The notes beneath the pieces were generated by a model that was not told the DNA's origin, did not search any database, and was given only the letters and a program-made list of their open reading frames with translations. A stretch of 64,000 nt of DNA, taken from Lytechinus pictus. Lineage: Eukaryota. Each line of letters begins with the position of its first letter. Positions within the stretch are counted from its first letter, which is position 1. Made by a program: the position numbers and the translations under genes. Positions 31,282-62,470 of this stretch are shown in pieces. The stretch covers positions 24,056,001 to 24,120,000 of the forward strand of contig NC_087257.1 in NCBI RefSeq assembly GCF_037042905.1. Direction: 5' to 3'.

Positions 31282-31318
31282 CTTGCGTTGATAATATACA
31301 GCAAAGTTGTTGAAGAAC

Positions 31319-32128
31319 TGTTAAGACCGTGTCAGCATATACCACGTTGTCACAATAACCACAAAGGAGGCGTATTCTAAAATTAGCTTCCTTTTAATAC
31401 TTGGAAGTATCTCAGTAGCGGTGCTAGCTTGTAGCATATATTCAACAACTGTGTGTGAATCCTGTAGCAAATAACAAAAATTAAACAACAAAGATTTAGA
31501 CTCTTGATTAAGTACTAATGGTTCCTTTCACATAGTATTACAATGGGTTAATAACTTGGAAATGATATCAATACCTCTTTCACTTGTCAACTGTAACGTG
31601 TTATTATTCATTACACTTTTATGTAAACACTTGTGCTTATCTATATCATTAAAACATAAGCTTCTTATTCACTGAAATGTGTTTGAAATGTCATTTGTTT
31701 TGTTTCTAAAAATTACATAAACATCTATTATTATTTATGATCAAACTGCACAATTCAGTTTCTTTTGCAAAGTGTTTAGCAAAGTATTGTAATATTTGTC
31801 AAAAAACGACTTAATCGAAACTAGCTTAAAGCCGAATCACCAAAGAAACATCAGAAAATATTCCTCCGCTTTGAAAACGTGCGCGGAAAATATCCGTACA
31901 ATTGGGTTTCAAAGTGATTAGCGTAAGAAAAATAGGTCTCATATCTCACCTCAAATGTATGAGTTATTGAACCAAATTAAACAAAATACGTGTTTTCAAA
32001 TAATTGACAAACTATCATAAAACATGTTTGTTTCTCTCATTTGCCTTGAATTACATTAACAACAAATTTTCATGAATTAAACTTTCACTCGGTACGCTGT
32101 CATGTTGAACACGTTTGTATTAACGTTA
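31319..32128 (-). repeat. 5' LTR of A, ORF-proximal part
   Basis: Matches 24669-25478. Confidence 0.96.
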
Positions 32129-37870: not shown

Positions 37871-39092
37871 ATTCTACCGAGTGGGTGAACAATTAGCAAC
37901 AATGAGTAACAATAACTTTTAGATTGAATTTAAGACAATGACAATCACAGTTATTAAAGAGAAACAATCACAATATCAGATGGGATGAATGAAATGCTTT
38001 AAAGAAAATTCACAAGATGTGTATTGATTAAGAACAAAATTCAAGAGTATATTTTCAAGTTACAGGTAAGATCCGAAGCTCAGAAAACCCACCTATTTTC
38101 TAGTAACAGGTAAGATCTGAAATTCAGAAAAACCCACCTCTAACGTACCACCGACACAAGTGTAATTTCGAGCTGGGTAAAAATTTGAAGTAAATTCAGA
38201 CTATTACTCAACTCGGCAACCAGGAGTATTAGAACTGGCTGTAAAAAACACTTGCCAAATGTCGATAGAAAATATATACTGGAAAATAGAAATGTATGAA
38301 CAGCAACTCTACGCCCTCAAAATATTTGTGCACTGCTCGATATGCAAGAATATGAAATTCTAGGAAACTCTTACCAACTGGAATAATTACTGAGGATCGA
38401 AAGAGAATTTCAAGTTCAAATTAACTTTTCCAATGCAATAAATCCACCAAATACTCACACCCGACTTTTTTTTTTTTTTTTTTTTTTTTTTTGGAACGGT
38501 GTGGTGTGAACGTTCCGAATTCGGAAGAAATCTTAAAGACAATGGCGGACTAAAAATATCCAAGCCTAGATGCAGATTTCAAACAATTCACAAACAAAAG
38601 CAACGAGATGGTAAGTTACGCAAAAATATGCAAGGAACGAAATTCTTGATCGCGAGCCAAACAATAGAAGAGACTCGCGAAGAATGCGATAAGAAATGCA
38701 AGTGCAACTAAACAATGTAGGGCGTGTGCACAGAGAATACCACGTGCGTTGCAATGAAAATGCAACGTAGTGGACATGAAATAATTCCCTAGATATGGCA
38801 AATATATTTAAAAATCCACTTGTATCAAACAAGAAATGATATCATGTACGGAAAAATGATAAAACTAAAACAAGATGTGTGCGAGATGCATGCGAATCCA
38901 CGCAATCACGGCACGCAAATTTACAATTCTCGGTAGAGAGCGGAAAACTTCTCACTCACTCTCCGTTCGATACACACTTCTAAATCACTCACAAATGACT
39001 TTTATGAGCAAATATAAAGTATGAAGGGACATGAAAAGATGAAAATGAAAATGACAGGCGCACAGGACGATCCGAAAACTCGCAATCGCCAA

Positions 39093-50802: not shown

Positions 50803-51674
50803 TTAAAGGGGTGGTTTTTTCAGTTTTGAACGCGGGCCGCGCATGCACTCATTAAAGGAGAAATATATTGATTATGAATATGGCCTTATTATATATCAGT
50901 GGAGAGGTAATGATGTGAGGATTACCATTAGGTCATTCAAAAATAACGAAAATAATATATAAGGTGGAAATCGCCAATTAAAAAGCGCTAAAATGCCTCT
51001 CCGAAATATGCCTCGCATCGGTCTCTGAATTGACTCGAATTTGATGACGTCACTGTCTGAACGAGAGTCGTGATTGGCTCTCCCACGTCAAGCTCCACTT
51101 GCATGCAAAACCTGTTGCGAGGGTACGTTTTCTCCACACTGACACTGAATACTTCGATCATGAAATGAAAGAAAACCCAGAAGTTTATCTAGATTTGGAT
51201 TTTCAAATTGATGATTATGCAGATGAAGAGAATGATGATAAAGTTTCTAACTCTAGAAAAACAAAGTGACGTGGATGGTGGTAAATTAAGGGAATTACGC
51301 CGGTGATGATGAGTAGGACAATTCAACTTGCAAGCCGATTCGACCAACGCATGCAGCTGATAGCTGCACCGCGGGTCAAATCCATGAAAAAGAATTACAT
51401 GCAGCATGACCACATCCAGACAGAGTCTCTTTCCTCTATCAACAACATAATGAGAAGGAAAATAATAAAATAACTGTACTTACAAACATGGGCGGAAATC
51501 TGTCCCGAAAGGTAGGGGGGACAACAGGGGCTGATCCAGCCTTCGCCAATAGGGGGGGGGGGGGCGAAAACATTTTCAGTCATATGTTAACCCCCGATCG
51601 GCAGCTCTAAGGTAATTTTTGTCTGTTTCATTGAAGGAGTAGTCCTCATGGTCACTTTTTAGCTTCATCCTTAT

Positions 51675-52107
51675 TGTAGGTGCACTTTAATCCCGGACTT
51701 TTATGCTTCGTATTAGACACTTTCACACGCTTCCGTTCGTACCCTCCTCCGTTGTCCCAATCCTTTTGCGATCATCAAATCATCATCACAAACGTCCCGT
51801 GGCACAACAAACATCAAAACTTCAAAGATGAAACCTCACTAAGTAAATTTAGTTCGATGGTCTATAATTCTAGTCATTCTGCAGGGTTCCGTTACACATT
51901 CATCGATCCAAAAATACACAGAATCAATCAATTAAAGTATTGAAAGGGAATCAAATTCGGAAGGTTGAAAAATCGTATGCCTTCGCCGGGTCCCATATTG
52001 TACACGTTTTCTATAACAAAATACTGCCCCAGCCCCTCGATCGTCAATTTTAAGCCTTTACCAAGTTTGAACAAGAGATGGCGCTATTTCACTTCTTGGC
52101 AGTAACA
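51675..52107 (-). repeat. 3' LTR of C
   Basis: Direct repeat of 61194-61626; ATTAAA poly(A)-type signal near the LTR 3' end. Confidence 0.97.
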
Positions 52108-54599
52108 TTTCCGGCCCCTTAATTTTCATAAAACAAGTTTTTTTAAATTACTTCACTTACTACGCCCCTGAATACTAACAAATCATCGATCAAGAAACAA
52201 ACATTCAACAGAAACTCGGTATAAAGAGGTTTAGTAAACAACACTCCCAAAAACACAAGAATGATTAATCCTTAGTTTTAACTCTTGTGTTAAAATACAT
52301 GTATAGTACATGTTAACACCAAAACTTTGCCAAAAATGGGAGATAGTTTTAAAGACCTCATTAATTCGAGTTGCCACTATAACGCATGAAGATAAAATAT
52401 TCGCATAAATCTAATTCACTAAACTAAAACTACTAGCAAAATTATGTAAACATATCAACCACATCTAAAAGTTAATTGCTTTAAACACTTGCGGAGATAA
52501 TAAACAAACACTTCATAAGTAAAAACTGTGCTGGTAATAATGATTTCTCCAAGCTAATTGTGCTAAAAATTTAACTACGTTTAAATATAAAAACACATTT
52601 ACATGCATAAAGTGCAAAGGTGTGAGAACCAGTGTGAAAATATTTCTTCAAGACAAACACAAACATTCATTTCTAAGCATGCAATTTGCAAAACGAGGTT
52701 CTGAAATGAAATTGTGTTAAATTTAAGAATTTTGAATAAGAAAATGTTCAGCATTCTCACATCCCTGAAATATTGTGAAGGTTATAAGAAAACTGTTTTT
52801 ACTCAAATAAAAGAAGAAAATGTTGTGTTTCCTTGGTATACATGTCTTGTATATCATACCAATTAAAGGGCAAAGTCTAACATTAATGCGCTGCATTTTA
52901 TTTCCCTTTTATTATTATTTTTTTAACCAAAGCCAATTCATGCTTTTATTTGGCATACCTGACAGACATGTACATGTATATAAGGCTCAACAAAACAAAA
53001 ACATTAGTTACCATACATTTCAATCATCAAAAGTTTAGTCATTTATAATAAAGAAAATTGACAACAAATTTAGATCAAGATATGATATGAATAATCTAAA
53101 ACATCATGAGACATTATTGATATTACGTACTCGCATTTTGCCTTATTTGTTTTCTATGAAGTCGCCATACTAAAACATTTATCCAATATAAATACCATAT
53201 GGAATAGGTAAAATGGCTTGTAGATAGATACAACTGACTTAAATTGGCTATTGTATCAATCTTTTGCATTGTGAAAAAACTATGGTAATTGAAATCGTCT
53301 CAAACTTCATGAGTAAATACGCTTTACATATCAAAACAAATTTCACTATTTCATAAACTATTGTATATTCTTTATGAACCACCTCAATGTAAAGAGGAAA
53401 CATTTAAAACTTTAAAGTTTGAACACCTTGGGACTATTAAATATCATAAAATATTTTACCCTGCAAGATTTGCACTTCATAATAAAGAGAGTATTACCAG
53501 CAAAAAAAAAACCCCACACAAATGTAGCCTTTTGGTAGTTATAAAGGCCCCGTAGACTTTGTCAAATCAATATACCTATATAGTAAGTATTTCAAAGTCA
53601 AATTGCATCCTTATAACAGCTTTAACCCTAATTCTCCCGGGGGGTTTTAGGGTTAATACTGATGTATTCTCGCTCTGAAAATATGTGCAAAACAAAAATG
53701 TGATATACTGCATTTAAAATTAAAGCAAAAATATTCATTTTGTAATGTTAAACTATCAAAGAAATACCTGCCTTCTCTTCCAATATATAACTGAGAAGAA
53801 TCACACTTTTACAAACATAAATCATTATTTTGAAAGCACCCTTATACATGTAACTCTTATAACATAAATCCGTAAGGTATGATTTCCTTTTAATTTTCCA
53901 CTTTCCATCTATGGACGGACATTAGAACCATTTTCCAAATACATGTAAATATTTGTACTAGGCCTCTAAAAGCATGTATGTCTCAGAGGCAGATTTTCAA
54001 TGGAAAACCTAAGCTTAAAACCATGGCAAAAAACAATTTCATATTTGCAACTTAGGTTTTATAAAATCTTATTAAAGCAAGATTTTGAGTTACACGTATA
54101 AGTGCATCAAATAAACACATGATCACAACATAAAACAATAGCAAAATGTTCATTATCCTGGATATCCGTTCTTCACTGAGTTCTTTCAGTTTTAACGTCA
54201 GAGTTCTTTAGAATGAATTCAGCTCTAGTCTTTTCTCATCATAAACATATTGAATGTTCCCATTGTCCTGCTTTCTGTTGCTGAATATTCAGTAAGCGTT
54301 CATAAAGTCTGGTACATGTATGATGCTTCAAAATGCAGCGAAGGTCTGCTGATCGTTTGGTAGGCGAAAAATGAAACATATGTTTGACACTCGGCATCCT
54401 TTCTCAAGAGCGTAATTATTTCTCACAAAAGTACAACAAAATCTTGAAATGGATAACATGAAGTAAATGATAATCGTGGTTGTGAACTTCTGATTAATGA
54501 TCCAACTGTCGTATGCTCAGCTGATCAAATTTCAAATATCATATATTTGTGACGGCGCTAGGCTCGCATCACATTATGCATAAAAAATAAATCGATCCA

Positions 54600-54697
54600 A
54601 CAAGGTATCCAAATATTTCACATTGAGCTTCATCGCAAAGGTGTATCCAAATATTTCACATTGAGCTTCATCACAAAGGTGTATCCAAATATTTCAC
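54600..54697. repeat. Tandem repeat of about 38 bp (about 2.5 copies) in the 3' region of C
   Basis: AAGGTGTATCCAAATATTTCACATTGAGCTTCATC(G/A)CA is repeated. Confidence 0.9.
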
Positions 54698-54945
54698 TGA
54701 AGTAACTGAAATGCTGACAAATTTTGTGGTGGCGCTAGGCTCGCACCACTTTAAGCAGAAATGGATCACTTCAAGAAAAACATCAAAATATTTCTTGCTG
54801 GTTGTCATTAAAGGCATTCACATGTCCAAGTGTCGCTTATTGAAATGATGAAACAAATTGTGGCGGCGCTAGGCTCACACCACATCATATTCATATAAAC
54901 TAATCCTGTATCTGTTAAATTCTCAACGCTCCAATAACTATCCAT

Positions 54946-57900
54946 TTATATGTCTCCTTCTAAGATGAAACACAGCTTGCTAATTGGCCTTAAGTAGACA
55001 CCCAACTTTGTTTTCACCTCGGCTTTGCGAACTAAGCCCTCATCATCCGCATACACTTGAGTAACTCGTCCCAATAACCAAGAGTTTCGTGGTAACGTCT
55101 GATCTACAACAAGCACCAAGTCACCTACTTGAAGGCTACGTTGAGGCTCCACCCACTTCTGCCTCTGCTGTAGTTGAGGTAGATATTCTCTCATCCACCT
55201 TCGCCAGAATATATCTGACAAGTACTGCACCTGCTTCCATCTCCTTCTAGCATAAGTATCAGTCTCTCTTGTTAGCGTCGGAGGTAGTACAGGTTGAGAC
55301 TTCATCAGGATCAAATGGTTAGGCGTTAATGCTTCCAAGTCATTCGGGTCATTTGAGGCCTTTGTCAAAGGCCTTCCATTAATGATACCTTCAGCTTCAC
55401 ACAGGAAAGTGTGTAAACCTTCGTCATCAAGTCTTTGCTGCCTAACCAGATTGAATAGCAACTGTCTGACAGTACGAATTTGGCGCTCCCAAACGCCACC
55501 GTGATGAGAACCACCTGGAGGGTTAAAGGTCCACTGAATGTTACGTTGCAACAGTGTGTCGCTGATCTGTACTTGATTCCAGTTATCAATTTCCCGTTTA
55601 AGCTCTCTTTGTGCTCCTATCAGATTTGTTCCATTATCGGACCTCATATGATTTACTGTTCCCCGTCTGGCAATAAATTTCCTGATGGCTGCGATGCACG
55701 AGTCTGTGTTTAGACTCTCAGCTTTCTCGATATGCACCGCCCTGGAAACTAAACATGTGAACATCACTCCATATGTTTTAACTACAGATCGCCCTCTCTT
55801 TACCTCTAAAGGACCGAAGTAGTCTATTCCAACTGAGGTAAATGGAGGTTCATCAGGTTTGACTCGATCAGAAGGTAGATTTGCCATCTTTTGCTCCATA
55901 ATCTTGGCTCTATGCCGTCGGCAAGAAATACATCTGCTAATCATTTTCCTGATGGCTGCGTCAGCACTTGGCATCCAGTATTTCCGATGTAGGCTTGACA
56001 GAATGTAATTCCTTCCCATATGTCCTGACATATTGTGTAAGTTTTCCAGGATCAAATTTGAGACGTGCTCATTCTTGGGAATGATTACCTGGTGCTTAGC
56101 ACTGTCTGGCATTGAGCTCCTATGCAGCCTTCCTCCAACTCTTAACAAGCCCTCATTGATCACTGGGTCGAGTTTGTATATTCGACTTGTTTTCCTGATT
56201 CCTGAACTTCCTCTTCTGTTTTCTCCAACAGCAGATTCCTTTCTTTCTAGACATCTGATTTCTTGAGCAAAGTTGTCCTTCTGCACAAACTTTAGGATCA
56301 TACTCTCTGCTACCTCCATTTCCTTGAGTGTAATCCTGGCTTTCAAGCTGTTGTCTTTAGATACATCTTTGGCCTTGTTCTTAGACTTCAGTACTACCCA
56401 TCTTAAGAATCTCTTTAGTCTGATCCAATCTGAATAATAATTCACCAGTTCTCTTGTTGGATTATTACATTCTTGGTTTGCTTCTGTTGCTAAGCATTTT
56501 CCTTTAACTTCCAGCTCCACTGTAATGTCATCGGGTAACACTTCACACTTGTTCATCCATTCATTGTCTGGATTCTTCAGGAATTCTGGTCCATCCTTCC
56601 AGGCTTTCCATTGAAGGAACTTGCTAACCTCGACTCCTCTTGAACAGCTGTCGGCGGGATTCATTGATGACTCCACATAACGCCATTGATGTGGTTCTGA
56701 TCCGTCCCTTATTACTGCCACTCTGTTAGCGACGAATGTCTTAAATCTGGCTGTTTGATTGGTTACATATCCTAAGACTGACATACTATCTGTCCAGAAA
56801 TATGTTTGGTCTATGGGAAATTCTAGCTCTTCCCTGATCATATGATTAATCCTGACCGCTAGAGTCGCTGCTGCGAGTTCCATTCTTGGGATGGAGACTT
56901 CCTTCAATGGTGCTACCCTTGCTTTGCTTGTTACCAAGCTCATCTGAATCTCGTCTTCCCTTTGCCATCTTAGATAGGAGACTGTCCCGTACCCTTTCTC
57001 ACTAGCATCACAAAAATGGTGTAAAGTCACTGCTTCTGCATCAAACCTGCTAGGCTTAAGGCATCTAGGCATCTTAAATTGCGAGAGCATGGGTAGCTCC
57101 GCCTTCCACTTCTGCCACTTCTTAGACATGTCTAATGGGATCTCTTCATCCCAACCTAGCTGAGATCGGCACAGTACTTGGAGCAACTGCTTTGCTGGCA
57201 ATATCACTGGAGACACACATCCTATAGGATCGTATACCGAGCTAACTGTGGATAAAATGCCTCTTCTTGTGCAAGGTCTATCCTTCAGGTCGACCTTCAC
57301 ACCTATGGTGTCGTCATCAGTGGACCACTCAATTCCAAGAGCTCTTTCTGTCACATTATTCTTAATATCCAGATCCATCCCTCTGATGCTCTTTGCTCTT
57401 TCCCTTGATGGTACCGATTTCAGCACTTCTTGTTGGTTACAAATCCACTTAGTCAAATGGAATCCTCCACCTCGGCATACTTCTATTAGGTCAGACATCA
57501 GCTGAACGGATTCTTCTACACTGGATGTAGAGCACAGGCAGTCATCTACGTAAAAATTCTGATGTACTGTTCTTACAATTTCTTCAGGGAATCTGTCTGC
57601 TTGGTCCACTGCCGCTCTTTTCAATGCGTAATTGGCACATGATGGTGAGGACACAGCGCCGAACACATGAACTTTCATCCTTAACTCTGATAATGGTTTC
57701 TGAATATCACCCTGGTCCCACCACAGAAATCGCATGAGATCCCTGTCGTCCTTCGGTACTCGAATCTGCGAGAACATCCCTTCTATATCTGCCATGAGTG
57801 CTACCCTGTCCTGTCTGAATCTGGTTAACACGCCGAACAGTCGGTTAGTTAAATCCGGCCCCTGTAGCAGCTCCCTATTTACACAGAAACCTCCATATTC

Positions 57901-60234
57901 TGCCGAACAATCAAATACGACTCTCAGCTTTTTCTTGTGAGGATGAGTGACACCATGGTGAGGGAGGTACCACAGTCTGCCATCATCTCTATCTCTTTCC
58001 TCTTCAGGTACCTTTTCCATGTAACCTTTCTTCTCCATCGAGTCCACAAAGGCAGTGTATTCTTTCTGAAATTCAGGTTGTCGTTCAAACCTTTTCTTTA
58101 AGTGGCCTAACCTTTGAGCTGCTTGGGGTCGGTTGCTGGGCAACTTGATATCTTCTCTCTTAAGAGGGAGGGCGATCTCGTAGTGACCATCTTGCAATTT
58201 GATTGAATGCTCCACCTTATTCATGAAGACCTTATCTTCTTGCGACTTCTCCTGTTTCTCTTCAATGATCCTTTCATTGAAGTCTTGATTGAAGAGCCTT
58301 TCAAATTGAAGGTCAATGTTTGCTTTCGCCTTCACCCTGTGGGACTGAATTCTGCGAGCACTATTTGCATGTTCCCTAACGGCTCCATAAATCAGCCAGC
58401 CTAGCACGGTCTTGCAAGCAAAGGGTCCGTTAGGGGTTTCACTGTTGATCACCTCAATTGGCTCCATTGCCTTTGGTACATTGCTTCCTATAAGTAAACC
58501 AACATGAGCTTCTTGGATGGCTGGTAACTCAATACCTTGAAGGTAGGGCCATTTCTGTATGTCTTCCTTTGTTGGTACGTCTTCCATGTTCACTGGTATC
58601 TTTTCTTGTGAATACACCTCTGGAAGCTGGACAATGTTTTTGCCTGTCAAATCTGAGACTTCCATACCGGTGAACACCTGGCTGCGTACCACCTTTTCAT
58701 CAGTCATGGTAGACACATGGAGATTTATCTTCCTTTTCTGAAGATGAAGGGTGCTGGCAAGCTTCTCTGTGCAGAAAACCGCATTACTACCAGAGTCAAC
58801 AAAGGCATATGTTTTGACTTCCATTCCAGTCTCACGTGACCTCACTATCACTGGGATAATGCCTGGTAGAGTGTCTATCCGAGATGAACTAGCGAAACTA
58901 CACTTGACGTGAGTTTCCTGGTTAATGTTTTCATGGATTGTCTGCCGACTCTGACCAGCATGTGTAGTCCCAGCAGCTGATGCCTCTGGCTCCAGTGACT
59001 CCTCCGAGACCTGCCTATCCCTACTGATGCTATTGTTCGTGGAAGGATTATCTTTCTTCTCCCTGTGTAGCACTGTAGGATGAGATTTACCACATACACT
59101 ACACTTCAGCCTCCACTTGCAGTCTTTTGCCATGTGTCCAGTCTTGCGTAGACAGCCGAAACAAAGACCTTGCTTCTTACAGACTGTTATTCGTTCATCA
59201 TAAGGCTTGGATGCTAATGCAGGGCACTCCGCAAGTGAATGGCTCCTCTCCTTGCAAATTATACAAGATTCTATATCCTTAGACCCCTCAGGAGTTGCTG
59301 ATACACCCAAACTGGTTCTGTGTGTGTTTGACGCCTTACCACCAACAGTTCCAGATTTCCCTGTCTGTTTGGTCTGGTACTTCAGGAGATCACCATACAC
59401 AGGGTTGGTGGCGATTCTGGCCTGTTTTGTGACAAATTTCACGACATCAGCAAAAGTAACATTCCTTTCCTTCTCCTCCAAGATATCATCAGCTAAAACT
59501 CGCCATCTTTCCCTGAGTTTGTATGGGAGTTTTCCTATAACCTGCTTAATGCTTTGTGAGTGATCAACTTCACATAGCATTTGGAGATCCTTTGCGAGAT
59601 TGTGTAGCTCAGTTACGAAAATCGAAAAACGATGCAGTTCCTCTCCATCTTCAGGCTTTATATCCTGCCACTGGAAGGCTCTCTTCATCATGGTTTCGAT
59701 GATTCTTTGGGTATTTCCAAACTTTCTCTTAAGAAGATCCTTTGCCTTCTTGCAAGCCATGGACTTGTCTTGGCCATACATGCAGCTTTTTACAATGGCA
59801 TTCGCATCTCCTGTGGTATACTGGTCTAAATAATAAAGCCTGTCGACATCGTTACTGGTCTTGGCCTCTACTGCATGTTCGAAGGCACTTATGAATGAGT
59901 AGTATTCAATTGGATCCCCATTGAAGGGCTTTATGCGCTGAGGAGGCAGAGCAGCCTTCATGTTACAATCAACAAGCATCCTCATCAGCTGGTTCTGTTG
60001 TTCAAAATAGGACATCATTGATGCACTGTCCATCATTCTTGTACCTGGAGCAGCATGATATGGAGCTGAAGGTGGTTGGCTCCCATCCATGGCATAAGCT
60101 ATATATTCCTCTTCGCTTGTTCGGCTATCATCTTCCATGAACAAGCCTGGACTAGATGCAGGTTGACCTGCTTGCGACATTACTGGATCTTGTAAAAGTT
60201 TGTGCAAATCAGCACCCCGTCTCACCTCATCCAT
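54946..60234 (-). CDS. BEL/Pao Gag-Pol polyprotein (1762 aa)
   Basis: FNGDPIEY gag motif, three Cys/His knuckles, protease FVDSGS, RT ADIEGMF...FYVDD, RNase H HHFCDASE/IPRMEL/WTDS, integrase IDYFGP/SDNGT/WERQI. Confidence 0.97.
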   Translation of the reverse strand: MDEVRRGADLHKLLQDPVMSQAGQPASSPGLFMEDDSRTSEEEYIAYAMDGSQPPSAPYHAAPGTRMMDSASMMSYFEQQNQLMRMLVDCNMKAALPPQRIKPFNGDPIEYYSFISAFEHAVEAKTSNDVDRLYYLDQYTTGDANAIVKSCMYGQDKSMACKKAKDLLKRKFGNTQRIIETMMKRAFQWQDIKPEDGEELHRFSIFVTELHNLAKDLQMLCEVDHSQSIKQVIGKLPYKLRERWRVLADDILEEKERNVTFADVVKFVTKQARIATNPVYGDLLKYQTKQTGKSGTVGGKASNTHRTSLGVSATPEGSKDIESCIICKERSHSLAECPALASKPYDERITVCKKQGLCFGCLRKTGHMAKDCKWRLKCSVCGKSHPTVLHREKKDNPSTNNSISRDRQVSEESLEPEASAAGTTHAGQSRQTIHENINQETHVKCSFASSSRIDTLPGIIPVIVRSRETGMEVKTYAFVDSGSNAVFCTEKLASTLHLQKRKINLHVSTMTDEKVVRSQVFTGMEVSDLTGKNIVQLPEVYSQEKIPVNMEDVPTKEDIQKWPYLQGIELPAIQEAHVGLLIGSNVPKAMEPIEVINSETPNGPFACKTVLGWLIYGAVREHANSARRIQSHRVKAKANIDLQFERLFNQDFNERIIEEKQEKSQEDKVFMNKVEHSIKLQDGHYEIALPLKREDIKLPSNRPQAAQRLGHLKKRFERQPEFQKEYTAFVDSMEKKGYMEKVPEEERDRDDGRLWYLPHHGVTHPHKKKLRVVFDCSAEYGGFCVNRELLQGPDLTNRLFGVLTRFRQDRVALMADIEGMFSQIRVPKDDRDLMRFLWWDQGDIQKPLSELRMKVHVFGAVSSPSCANYALKRAAVDQADRFPEEIVRTVHQNFYVDDCLCSTSSVEESVQLMSDLIEVCRGGGFHLTKWICNQQEVLKSVPSRERAKSIRGMDLDIKNNVTERALGIEWSTDDDTIGVKVDLKDRPCTRRGILSTVSSVYDPIGCVSPVILPAKQLLQVLCRSQLGWDEEIPLDMSKKWQKWKAELPMLSQFKMPRCLKPSRFDAEAVTLHHFCDASEKGYGTVSYLRWQREDEIQMSLVTSKARVAPLKEVSIPRMELAAATLAVRINHMIREELEFPIDQTYFWTDSMSVLGYVTNQTARFKTFVANRVAVIRDGSEPHQWRYVESSMNPADSCSRGVEVSKFLQWKAWKDGPEFLKNPDNEWMNKCEVLPDDITVELEVKGKCLATEANQECNNPTRELVNYYSDWIRLKRFLRWVVLKSKNKAKDVSKDNSLKARITLKEMEVAESMILKFVQKDNFAQEIRCLERKESAVGENRRGSSGIRKTSRIYKLDPVINEGLLRVGGRLHRSSMPDSAKHQVIIPKNEHVSNLILENLHNMSGHMGRNYILSSLHRKYWMPSADAAIRKMISRCISCRRHRAKIMEQKMANLPSDRVKPDEPPFTSVGIDYFGPLEVKRGRSVVKTYGVMFTCLVSRAVHIEKAESLNTDSCIAAIRKFIARRGTVNHMRSDNGTNLIGAQRELKREIDNWNQVQISDTLLQRNIQWTFNPPGGSHHGGVWERQIRTVRQLLFNLVRQQRLDDEGLHTFLCEAEGIINGRPLTKASNDPNDLEALTPNHLILMKSQPVLPPTLTRETDTYARRRWKQVQYLSDIFWRRWMREYLPQLQQRQKWVEPQRSLQVGDLVLVVDQTLPRNSWLLGRVTQVYADDEGLVRKAEVKTKLGVYLRPISKLCFILEGDI

Positions 60235-61193
60235 CTTGCAGATAAAAGTTAACTTGTGCAGGTCTTACATCAACGTCTTAGCCTTCATATATGAACTTCT
60301 GCACTTTAATATGACAAAGTCTTAGAATCTTGAGTATTCCTGAGGATCATGTACTTGAGATTGTTGCAACTCAGCTAACCTTGTACTACTTGCAGCATCA
60401 TGATCTGTGGTATTCCTTCTTGACTTGTATCATGAACTTCTCTATTGATTTTCCAAAGTTTATTCAAGCCCGAGTTTCAGATCCACTGTTAACTCTCTAG
60501 TGTGTTTTAATTTTCTCCTTCTACTTTATTCTATTCCTGTTGTTGTGTAGGCTGATTGTTAATTAGTCCTGGCCTCATTAGATCTCTGTCTTAATCTCGG
60601 ACATCTAGCTCAGAGATCTACCTCAAAATTGATCTGTTTTTCCAGCACCTTACAACTACGAATTACGGCCCTGGCCTTCATTTTATTCAGATCTTTTCCA
60701 AGACTAAAAACATCCTTTTCACTGCCTTGTTCATCTTCAGGAATGTGCTTCTCATTTTGATTACTTCATTTCACTAGGATGCTCAACTTCATCTACGTTC
60801 CCGTTTATAATATAAAATCTAGCTTAGATTCCATATTGAAACTCTAGGGTTGACTGCATTCATCTCATTAGCAAAACCAGTTTTATTTCACCACCATGTC
60901 ATGACTGGTAATTTTCATTTCCTTTTGTCTCAACTTTGTTCATCTAGTCTAATTCAAGTCTCAAGAAGCAGGCTATGCACGTATTCCAATACAGAACGAA
61001 ATAGTCTATGTTCTATACGCTTCCCTTTATAGTTATAGCGTCATCAATCACGATTGTTTACTCACATACGGTACTCAGCTAGTGTCCTTCTTAACTGGGT
61101 GAAGAATCCTCCATCCTTGTTTGATTACTGAGCTCAGAACAAATCCATGTTTACTACAGTCCAATGTTGAAGCGAGACCGATTTTTCAACTGA

Positions 61194-61626
61194 TGTAGGT
61201 GCACTTTAATCCCGGACTTTTATGCTTCGTATTAGACACTTTCACACGCTTCCGTTCGTACCCTCCTCCGTTGTCCCAATCCTTTTGCGATCATCAAATC
61301 ATCATCACAAACGTCCCGTGGCACAACAAACATCAAAACTTCAAAGATGAAACCTCACTAAGTAAATTTAGTTCGATGGTCTATAATTCTAGTCATTCTG
61401 CAGGGTTCCGTTACACATTCATCGATCCAAAAATACACAGAATCAATCAATTAAAGTATTGAAAGGGAATCAAATTCGGAAGGTTGAAAAATCGTATGCC
61501 TTCGCCGGGTCCCATATTGTACACGTTTTCTATAACAAAATACTGCCCCAGCCCCTCGATCGTCAATTTTAAGCCTTTACCAAGTTTGAACAAGAGATGG
61601 CGCTATTTCACTTCTTGGCAGTAACA
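61194..61626 (-). repeat. 5' LTR of C
   Basis: Direct repeat of 51675-52107. Confidence 0.97.
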
Positions 61627-61631
61627 CTTAT

Positions 61632-62470
61632 AAATCAACATAAATATATATCATTGTCCTTATTTATATAATGCGAGCGCGAAGCGCAAGCAAATTTTTT
61701 TGGAAAATTTATGTATTTTTTTCCTAAAATTTTAACATTCTGGGCAATGTTTGTTATCCTGAAAAAGATGTATATACAACTGAATATTTACTACGACCGC
61801 GAAGTGCGAGCAGAGGTTAACTGATGGAAAAGGTACCTGTTAAAGACTGCTTGCAATTAGCCATGAAGACGTTACATATTTCAACAATCAAATAATGCGA
61901 GCGCGAAGCGCGAGCTGAAATTTTTACCTAAAGACTGGAAATTCTAAGCACTTTTTGTAACTTAAACATATAATAGGTATATAACTAAACAATTGATGCG
62001 AACGCGAAGCATGAGCGGAAGGTTTTGAGATTTAGACCTAAGAACGAGACACTCTGTTCATGTTTTGTAAATCATGAAAAGGATGAGTAATTGGGGTCTT
62101 TCTTACACCCGGTCCTTACATTAATAAAGCGAGTGCAAAATGCAGCCAGAAAATGTTCATATACGTTTAATTTGAATTGATCGAAAGGGTACTTGTTAAG
62201 GACTGCTTGCACTTAGCCATGAAGACGTGACATATTTCAACAATCAATGCTAGCGCGAATCGCGAGCTGAAAATTTTTGACATTTTTTCAAAAAGAATCG
62301 AAAATTTTAATCAATTTTTGTAATCGTGAACAGGGTAGCTATATAACTAAACAATTGACGTAAGCGAAGCTTGAGCAGAAAAATTCGAGATTTAGACCTA
62401 AAAACGGGACACTCTACTCATGTTTTGTAAATCATGAAAAGGATGAGTAATAGGGGATCTTTCTACATTA
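61632..62470. repeat. Remainder of the CAGGGGC-type repeat (starts about 51525) that C interrupts; contains a diverged tandem duplication of about 360 bp
   Basis: Flanks of C join to match the uninterrupted relative at about 19851-20040; recurrent GCGAGCGCGAAGCGCGAGC motif; about 61830-62105 resembles about 62187-62467. Confidence 0.7.

What the first reader, a model, noticed from the sequence alone, without database searches (positions are those of the whole stretch)
61179..61494. Candidate tRNA-independent self-priming in BEL/Pao element C: the PBS position is complementary to its own LTR
Seen: the sense strand after the 5' LTR reads ...CTACA|TCA GTTGAAAAATCG, with no TGG and so no tRNA-CCA match. 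The 12-mer at 61179-61190 is the perfect reverse complement of 61483-61494 inside the LTR (sense CGATTTTTCAAC). That LTR site lies about 40 nt downstream of a TATA-like TATAGAA, near the expected transcript 5' end, and a further GAAG/CTTC helix is possible. Known: fission-yeast Tf1 and related Tf1/sushi Ty3/Gypsy elements prime reverse transcription with the first ~11 nt of their own RNA annealed to the PBS, whereas BEL/Pao elements are generally described as tRNA-primed. Inference: this intact, recently inserted BEL element may self-prime. A rough uniform-composition estimate (433 sites x ~5 offsets / 4^12) gives about 1e-4 by chance. Caveat: the duplex stops 3 nt short of the LTR end.
Basis: partly seen in the sequence, partly recalled or inferred. 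Interest (0 to 1): 0.85.

Follow-up and report, generated by a model that had tools for sequence, protein, structure and literature searches.

The report
Self-priming BEL/Pao retrotransposon, sea urchin
A sea-urchin BEL/Pao retrotransposon has, where a tRNA primer site should be, 12 bases that pair perfectly with its own LTR; relatives in other urchins, abalone, fish and amphioxus keep the pairing while both sequences change, so this clade probably primes reverse transcription with its own RNA.

Summary
Bases 61190-61179 (GTTGAAAAATCG, 3 nt past the 5' LTR) are the perfect complement of 61494-61483 (CGATTTTTCAAC) in the LTR, 40 nt after TATAGAA. A run this long arose in 1 of 2000 LTR shuffles.

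Related elements in S. purpuratus, Diadema (two families), Haliotis, Carassius and Branchiostoma each have a perfect 10-14 nt complement at the same two places. In the five GTT-anchored elements (element C, S. purpuratus, both Diadema families, Haliotis), six of 12 positions changed on both sides. An insect BEL element and a gag-only element in this window have ordinary TGG tRNA-type sites.

In 11 more distant families of this genome the complement is split across a consensus intron inside the LTR. It becomes perfect (10-14 nt) only after the intron is spliced out on paper. Two earlier notes of this scan (s1-317469, s1-323330) proposed this on other DNA of this genome, and a third (s1-320062) noted element A.

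Best reading: Tf1-like self-priming in Belpaoviridae, which ICTV describes as tRNA-primed.

The transcription start is not shown. It rests on TATA spacing, and the RNA-seq is thin and ambiguous in strand. No primer was observed.

The parts
61194..61626 (-). 5' LTR of element C (433 bp, TG...CA)
   Evidence: Alignment with the 3' LTR is 100% identical. The repeat family is shown.
51675..52107 (-). 3' LTR of element C
61483..61494 (-). LTR site CGATTTTTCAAC: the proposed self-primer, ending ...AAC and followed by C. Its homologous position is kept in all relatives.
   Evidence: Covaries with the PBS.
51964..51975 (-). The same site in the 3' LTR. It would restore the primer sequence after the first strand transfer.
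61179..61190 (-). Primer-binding site GTTGAAAAATCG, the perfect complement of the LTR site
61191..61193 (-). Spacer TCA between the LTR end (CA) and the PBS. Spacers in the GTT-anchored relatives are 2-6 nt and end in A.
61528..61534 (-). TATA-like TATAGAA, 40 nt before the site. S. purpuratus has TATATAAG at -41.
54946..60234 (-). Gag-pol open reading frame, 1762 aa, with BEL/Pao domains (Pao peptidase PF05380, RVT_1, DUF1759, Integrase_H2C2, DUF5641)
52108..52120 (-). Plus-strand primer tract AAGGGGCCGGAAA next to the 3' LTR. The GGGGCC(G/A) core is kept from urchins to fish, abalone and amphioxus.
61627..61631 (-). Target-site duplication ATAAG (the other copy is at 51670-51674)

Best explanation
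Element C is a structurally intact BEL/Pao LTR retrotransposon of a sea urchin that starts reverse transcription without a tRNA.

Shown: the 12 nt beginning 3 nt after the 5' LTR pair perfectly with a 12-nt LTR site, and this pairing is kept by compensatory change across the clade.

Inferred: transcription starts a few nt (about 1-10) before the site, roughly 30-40 nt after the TATA-like box, so the site lies at the 5' end of the genomic RNA. This end folds back over about 300 nt of R-U5 onto the PBS. By analogy with Tf1, the element's RNase H cuts the RNA after ...CAAC, at the invariant AAC|C boundary that faces an unpaired A before GTT. The new 3'-OH is extended by reverse transcriptase through the spacer and U5/R to make minus-strand strong-stop DNA. 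That DNA transfers to the 3' R, and the 3' LTR copy of the site restores the primer sequence.

In the more distant families of this genome the same primer exists only after an intron inside the LTR is spliced out. C and its nearest relatives carry the uninterrupted, intron-less version.
For: (1) The 12-bp perfect duplex is at the canonical PBS position, and there is no TGG in the first 30 post-LTR nt (1 of 2000 shuffles).

(2) Covariation (LTR site / PBS):
- C: CGATTTTTCAAC / GTTGAAAAATCG
- S. purpuratus (66% aa identity): TGGTCTTTCAAC / GTTGAAAGACCA
- Diadema (66%): CAATCTTTCAAC / GTTGAAAGATTG
- Diadema (53%): AAGTTTCCTTTAAC / GTTAAAGGAAACTT
- Haliotis: GGTTTTTCAAC / GTTGAAAAACC
- Carassius: AGTCTTTGAC / GTCAAAGACT
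- Branchiostoma: TAAGTTTTAC / GTAAAACTTA
. Shuffles reaching the observed run: 0, 0, 0, 6, 17 and 16 of 2000, in that order from S. purpuratus.

(3) The rest of the LTRs is unalignable. The site and its upstream context (ACCCGG...GGAGG..CA) are conserved islands.

(4) In 11 of 11 further families of the same genome the complement is X1|GTAAGT or GTGAGT ... polyY-CAG|X2-AAC-C, and X1+X2 is a perfect 10-14 nt complement of the PBS. Each LTR has only one or two CAG-N(1-4)-AACC sites (one, except two in E5), and one of them always matches its own PBS. The six-base match was found in 11 of 11 own pairs against 20 of 102 mismatched pairs.

(5) Controls: an insect BEL element (TGGTCCAG..., no LTR complement) and the gag-only LTR element in this window (TGGCGATTGCGAG) have ordinary tRNA-type sites.

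(6) TATA-like motifs lie 38-41 nt before the complement in C, S. purpuratus, E7, E9 and E10.

(7) Minimum-energy and centroid folds of the putative 5' RNA of C and of S. purpuratus close with this duplex.

(8) RNA-seq depth over the LTR drops at 61467-61493 in three runs, and a transcript-like contig ends at 61454.

(9) The Tf1 precedent: the first 11 nt pair with the PBS and RNase H cuts between nt 11 and 12 (PMC7175516; Tj1 in PMC4600332).
Against: - No primer, cleavage or strong-stop DNA was observed.
- The transcription start is inferred, not mapped.
- In one search all reads have the first mate on the minus strand. In most stranded libraries that means plus-strand RNA, which is antisense to the element. 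An antisense ATTAAA lies just before the coverage edge, so the edge could be an antisense 3' end.
- Depth is 2-11 reads, and most reads are 95-99% alike and come from solo LTRs elsewhere in the genome.
- The host tRNA set could not be assembled.
- The overall fold energy of the 5' RNA is not unusual (z -1.1 and -1.8).
- The TATA-to-site distance (40 nt) is longer than the usual 30. It fits only if about 10 nt precede the duplex in the RNA.
Confidence: 0.75

Rival explanations
1. The LTR-PBS pairing is real and selected, but it serves another purpose: genome circularisation, dimerisation, packaging or control of translation. The primer would then be some unidentified host RNA.
For: Covariation shows pairing, not priming. 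Long-range 5' UTR pairings are known in retroviruses (general knowledge).
Against: The paired segment sits exactly where a PBS must be, 0-6 nt after the LTR's CA, in every family. No other candidate PBS (no TGG) lies nearby. The duplex has sharp conserved ends (A|GTT and AAC|C) and is always perfect, with no G:U pairs, in copies with identical LTRs. That is expected if the PBS is recopied from the primer at each cycle.
Confidence: 0.12
2. The site lies in U3, with transcription starting downstream of it. Pairing would then join the 3' end region of the RNA to the 5' PBS. Priming would come from a cut in the 3' U3 copy, in cis or from a second RNA.
For: The transcription start is unmapped. In the split-type families the donor and acceptor are also transcribed in the 3' LTR.
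Against: TATA-like boxes lie 38-41 nt upstream of the complement in several families. The coverage edge is at the site rather than downstream of it. The Tf1 precedent uses the 5' end.
Confidence: 0.07
3. The primer is a host tRNA, a half-tRNA or another small RNA (as in copia or Ty5), and the LTR match is incidental.
For: ICTV describes the family as tRNA-primed (PMC8742986). The host tRNA set was not fully searched.
Against: Six of 12 PBS positions differ among the lineages and always match the element's own LTR. tRNA-Lys has no match to the PBS; its only 7-nt match to the leader lies far downstream of it. An 18-nt genome search with up to 2 mismatches found perfect matches only at the element's own copies and no tRNA-like multicopy exact hit. 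No Rfam family matches.
Confidence: 0.04
4. The match is due to chance.
Against: Independent perfect matches at the homologous positions were found in seven contiguous-type elements (including C) and in 11 split-type families.
Confidence: 0.01

Closest known systems
Tf1/Tf2 (S. pombe), Tj1, and the Tf1/sushi group of Ty3/gypsy elements (self-primed reverse transcription)
   Same: There is no tRNA-type PBS. A 10-14 nt PBS next to the 5' LTR is complementary to a site in the element's own LTR that is thought to be the RNA 5' end. The pairing is kept by covariation among relatives. Primer length (Tf1: 11 nt) is similar.
   Different: The polyprotein is BEL/Pao (Pao peptidase, DUF1759, DUF5641), not Ty3/gypsy, so this would be an independent or very old occurrence in another family. 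The duplex has invariant ends (GTT/AAC followed by C). In many family members the primer sequence is interrupted by an LTR intron. Cleavage and priming are proven for Tf1 and unproven here.
Canonical BEL/Pao (Belpaoviridae: Tas, Pao, BEL, Achilles)
   Same: Gene content and order, the single gag-pol frame, TG...CA LTRs and the 5-bp target-site duplication.
   Different: [quoted passage not shown] PBS (PMC8742986, PMC4580426). The insect relative examined here fits that description. Element C and its clade do not.
copia / Ty5 (primed by an internal fragment of initiator tRNA-Met)
   Same: The PBS is non-canonical and lacks TGG.
   Different: Their PBS matches a conserved host tRNA segment. Here the PBS varies and tracks the element's own LTR.

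Membership tests
Self-primed LTR retrotransposons (mechanistic class defined by Tf1) | No PBS complementary to a tRNA 3' end (TGG...) next to the 5' LTR | tested here: met
   No TGG in the first 30 nt after the LTR. The same holds in the relatives. Control elements with TGG are recognised.
Self-primed LTR retrotransposons (mechanistic class defined by Tf1) | The PBS is complementary to a sequence of the element's own LTR | tested here: met
   12 of 12 bases pair, and 1 of 2000 shuffles reach this.
Self-primed LTR retrotransposons (mechanistic class defined by Tf1) | The complementarity is kept in relatives by changes on both sides | tested here: met
   Seven contiguous-type elements including C (six lineages besides C) and 11 split-type families.
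Self-primed LTR retrotransposons (mechanistic class defined by Tf1) | The complementary segment is the extreme 5' end of the element's RNA | tested here: inconclusive
   TATA spacing and the coverage edge at 61467-61493 are compatible. The strand of the reads is ambiguous and the depth is low.
Self-primed LTR retrotransposons (mechanistic class defined by Tf1) | RNase H cuts the RNA duplex and the short RNA primes minus-strand DNA | not testable with these tools
   Needs biochemistry or mapping of strong-stop DNA.
Tf1/sushi clade of Ty3/gypsy (phylogenetic membership) | A Ty3/gypsy-type polyprotein | tested here: not met
   Pfam families of BEL/Pao (PF05380, PF03564, PF18701). In the tree it groups with BEL elements.
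BEL/Pao (Belpaoviridae) | Pao-type aspartic peptidase, RT, RNase H and integrase in BEL order, flanked by LTRs | tested here: met
BEL/Pao (Belpaoviridae) | Replication primed by a host tRNA (as in the ICTV description) | tested here: not met
   No tRNA-type PBS. The PBS covaries with the element's own LTR.

The most novel reading that the evidence does not exclude
Self-priming is an old, clade-wide property of a large branch of Belpaoviridae that spans echinoderms, cephalochordates, fish and molluscs. It comes in two forms. In one, the primer is assembled only when an intron inside the LTR is spliced out, so priming would depend on splicing. In the other, the uninterrupted form carried by element C, the intron is absent. 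On the tree of 20 elements the uninterrupted form is nested among split forms, which suggests it arose by intron loss, for example by reverse transcription of an RNA spliced in its 3' LTR.
Probability: 0.5. Interest if true: 0.9.

Novelty: new variant of a known kind. Interest (0 to 1): 0.8.

Why it matters
Priming of reverse transcription is a defining step of every LTR retroelement. Self-priming has so far been tied to the Tf1/sushi branch of Ty3/gypsy, and the ICTV profile states that Belpaoviridae use tRNA. Four full-text searches that combined self-priming terms with BEL/Pao terms found no report of it.

If the reading holds:
- A second family of the Ortervirales uses the mechanism, across several animal phyla including vertebrates.
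- PBS-based annotation pipelines that look for tRNA 3' ends would systematically miss or mis-score these elements.
- The invariant AAC|C / A|GTT boundary gives a concrete substrate for studying cleavage of RNA duplexes by RNase H.
- The split version would link pre-mRNA splicing to the start of reverse transcription, which has no described precedent that I know of.

Tried and rejected
A full comparison of host tRNAs was therefore impossible. tRNA-Lys does not match the PBS.
- Own-family copies: there are only 3 full-length copies and 2 solo LTRs, 94-100% alike. They give no useful covariation. One decayed copy has a C>T change in the PBS that leaves G:U.
- Longest-run and duplex-energy scans of the 11 distant families against their own LTRs showed nothing above background. 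This first looked like evidence against conservation. It was explained once the complement was found to be split by an LTR intron.
- I considered reading the conserved post-LTR motif (C/A)AGTT as a promoter initiator, as a 5' splice site, or as a tRNA T-loop look-alike in the sense direction. I dropped all three, because GTT is simply the end of the PBS that pairs with ...AAC.
- The ATTAAA just before the site in E1, E3 and E4 could have been a poly(A) signal, with priming from an RNA 3' end. I rejected this because the motif is not general and a poly(A) tail could not pair.
- A repeated 18-mer, GTCCTATTTTTCAACTGA, was tested as the PBS of another family. No matching LTR site lies near its copies.
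- Holothuria locus L071: the LTR ends are degraded (98% identity, no CA end), so it was not usable.
- Logan contigs L069 and L070 are too short to define LTRs.
- Two ENA contigs gave no DNA.
- The paper PMC1369541 (Lin and Levin 1997) is not held.
- Extra helix upstream of the site: the enrichment is weak.

Full report
**What is there.** Element C lies on the minus strand of the window. Its LTRs (61626-61194 and 52107-51675) are 433 bp, identical, run TG...CA, and are flanked by the 5-bp duplication ATAAG. Between them are a 960-nt leader, one open frame of 1762 aa (60234-54946) and about 2.8 kb with no long frame. The protein carries the Pfam families of BEL/Pao elements: Pao peptidase, RVT_1, DUF1759, Integrase_H2C2 and DUF5641. 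Its nearest named relatives are sea-urchin proteins (Diadema antillarum and Strongylocentrotus purpuratus, both 66% identical), so the host is an echinoid. The genome holds three full-length copies and two solo LTRs of the family, 94-100% alike.

**The observation.** After ...CTACA the sense strand reads TCA GTTGAAAAATCG GTC. Bases 61190-61179 are the exact reverse complement of 61494-61483 (CGATTTTTCAAC, LTR positions 133-144). The next base on each side cannot pair, so the duplex is exactly 12 bp. TATAGAA begins 40 nt upstream of the site. There is no TGG within 30 nt of the LTR end. A run of 12 or more between the first 20 post-LTR bases and a dinucleotide-shuffled LTR appeared in 1 of 2000 trials. 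In a 13x13 matrix of LTRs against post-LTR segments, C with its own LTR gave the lowest duplex energy of all 169 cells. A gag-only LTR element in the same window has a plain tRNA-type site (TGGCGATTGCGAG, one base after its LTR), so ordinary sites are easy to recognise in this genome.

**The comparative test.** I fetched the genomic loci of the closest proteins from other species and delimited their LTRs by self-alignment. Every one has a perfect complement between the same two places, and the sequences differ:

| Element | LTR site | PBS | Length |
|---|---|---|---|
| C | CGATTTTTCAAC | GTTGAAAAATCG | 12 |
| S. purpuratus | TGGTCTTTCAAC | GTTGAAAGACCA | 12 |
| Diadema (66%) | CAATCTTTCAAC | GTTGAAAGATTG | 12 |
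| Diadema (53%) | AAGTTTCCTTTAAC | GTTAAAGGAAACTT | 14 |
| Haliotis | GGTTTTTCAAC | GTTGAAAAACC | 11 |
| Carassius | AGTCTTTGAC | GTCAAAGACT | 10 |
| Branchiostoma | TAAGTTTTAC | GTAAAACTTA | 10 |

Shuffles that reached the observed run numbered 0, 0, 0, 6, 17 and 16 of 2000, in order from S. purpuratus. Among the five GTT-anchored elements (the first five rows), six of the 12 aligned positions vary, and each stays Watson-Crick paired with its own partner. The LTRs are otherwise unalignable. The site, an upstream block (ACCCGG...GGAGG..CA) and the LTR termini are the only conserved islands. The site is followed by C in every lineage except Branchiostoma. In the GTT-anchored elements the PBS follows a 2-6 nt spacer that ends in A, so the helix ends at a fixed A/C mismatch. 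An insect BEL element (29% identical) has TGGTCCAG... after its LTR and no LTR complement.

**The apparent exception and its resolution.** Eleven families of the same genome, 43-52% identical in pol, showed no own-LTR complement above background. They did share the post-LTR motif A|GTT. Anchoring on GTT showed that each LTR has a 6-7 nt complement ending in AAC-C and directly preceded by a pyrimidine tract and CAG. Each LTR has one CAG-N(1-4)-AACC site (E5 has two), and one always fits its own PBS. The six-base match was found in 11 of 11 own pairs against 20 of 102 mismatched pairs.

Two earlier notes of this scan on other DNA of this genome (s1-317469, s1-323330) proposed that a BEL PBS matches a splice junction inside its LTR. 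I tested that idea on these 11 elements. In every one the rest of the complement lies upstream in the LTR, directly before a 5' splice-site sequence: GTAAGT or GTGAGT in ten, and a weaker GTCATC in E1. Joining it to the sequence after CAG gives a perfect 10-14 nt complement of the PBS. The implied LTR introns are 192-1073 nt.

Element C and the other contiguous-type elements therefore carry the same primer sequence uninterrupted. On a pol tree they form one clade (support 94/97) nested among split-type lineages. That fits loss of the intron, but 20 rows and two long-branch outgroups do not prove it.

**How it most likely works.**

*Shown:* a conserved, covarying, perfect pairing between the PBS position and an LTR site, with fixed helix ends.

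*Inferred:* the site is at or near the 5' end of the RNA. TATA-like motifs lie 38-41 nt before the complement in C, S. purpuratus, E7, E9 and E10. Minimum-energy and centroid folds of RNA running from just before the site to just past the PBS close with this duplex in C and in S. purpuratus.

*By analogy with Tf1:* in Tf1 the first 11 bases pair with the PBS and RNase H cuts between bases 11 and 12 (PMC7175516; Tj1 in PMC4600332). Here the RNA would be cut after ...AAC and extended through the spacer and U5/R. The 3' LTR copy of the site (51975-51964) would restore the sequence after strand transfer. The complement is always perfect in copies with identical LTRs. It is broken only in a decayed copy (C>T in the PBS of the 95% copy). 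This fits a PBS that is recopied from its primer at each cycle.

**What the RNA data do and do not show.** Three rRNA-depleted RNA runs of the species were laid on 60900-61700. Depth is 2-11 over the downstream two-thirds of the LTR and falls at 61467-61493. A 1.8-kb contig of a fourth run ends at 61454. This is where a start near 61497-61504 would put the edge.

Three caveats apply. Most reads are 95-99% alike and carry the variants and flanks of the solo LTR copies. Depth is too low for a start table. All reads have the first mate on the minus strand, which in most stranded kits means plus-strand RNA, antisense to the element, and an antisense ATTAAA lies just before the edge. I therefore count this as compatible, not as support.

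**tRNA rival.** Only tRNA-Lys genes could be retrieved, and they do not match. An 18-nt search of the genome for the PBS complement, allowing up to two mismatches, found perfect matches only at the element's own copies. No Rfam family matches. The main argument against a host primer is the covariation itself.

**Comparison with what is known.** Functionally this is the Tf1/sushi arrangement. Phylogenetically it is not a member of that group, because the protein is BEL/Pao. [quoted passage not shown] An insect BEL paper reports a tRNA-Tyr site (PMC4580426). The large survey of BEL/Pao in metazoans and the Sinbad paper do not discuss priming. Full-text searches that combined self-priming with BEL/Pao terms found no report. 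The library lacks most subscription journals, so an older description cannot be excluded.

**Verdict.** I rate it a new variant of a known kind: self-priming in a second retroelement family, spread over several phyla. The split, splicing-dependent form may be a more novel relative. Confidence that the pairing is functional is about 0.95. Confidence that it is the minus-strand primer is about 0.75.

Noticed in passing
L041+L045, L043+L047, L044+L048, L049-L064 (own genome, 11 BEL families): The LTRs contain a consensus intron (GTAAGT or GTGAGT ... polyY-CAG, 192-1073 nt). Removing it on paper creates a perfect 10-14 nt complement of the PBS. Exon 2 starts 81-371 nt before the LTR end.
   Followed up: yes
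window 52108-52120; L065, L066, L068, L071-L074 just before their 3' LTRs: The plus-strand primer tract is not a pure polypurine run. It is a conserved (A)TTAGGGGCCGG motif shared by urchin, sea cucumber, fish and abalone elements (amphioxus has GGGGGCCA). It is absent from the insect element.
   Followed up: partly
window 31305-31450 (element A, minus strand; ORF 31281-26056): A second BEL family, 27% identical to C, has a 10-nt complement: LTR AGTTGTTGAA after CAC, and PBS TTCAACAACT 4 nt past the LTR. 73 of 2000 shuffles reach this length. No relatives could be fetched to test covariation.
   Followed up: partly
window 39078-39090 (gag-only LTR element, 5' LTR 39633-39092): This non-autonomous element has an ordinary TGG-type site (TGGCGATTGCGAG) one base after its LTR. 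Its LTRs are only 93.6% alike.
   Followed up: partly
own genome contig C4, about 9,700,700-9,736,000: A dense tandem array of tRNA-Lys (TTT and CTT) genes, at least 45 copies spaced about 460-490 bp apart.
   Followed up: no
window 61194 and 61626 (loose read ends): RNA reads run from this LTR family into flanks that are not those of element C. One flank is that of the solo LTR on contig C10. In run X14 another flank reads ...GCTGTGGCCGAGTG, which resembles the start of a tRNA gene, so that animal may carry an insertion next to a tRNA gene.
   Followed up: no
window 52121-54945 and 60235-61178: Element C has an unusually long leader (about 960 nt) and about 2.8 kb between the pol stop and the 3' LTR, with no open frame of 100 aa or more.
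   Followed up: no
own genome, at least 17 places: The 18-mer GTCCTATTTTTCAACTGA is repeated across many contigs, including four copies within 17 kb on C18. It is not explained. No matching LTR-type site lies near its copies.
   Followed up: partly
window 61495-61508 with 61165-61178; homologous places in L065, L066, L068, L072, L073: A second short helix (4-5 bp) can form between bases just upstream of the LTR site and bases just downstream of the PBS: GAAG/CTTC, GAAAC/GTTTC, GAGG/CCTC, AACC/GGTT, CAGCA/TGCTG and GACCA/TGGTC. Helices of 4 bp or more occur in 10 of 17 own pairs and in 30% of mismatched pairs.
   Followed up: partly
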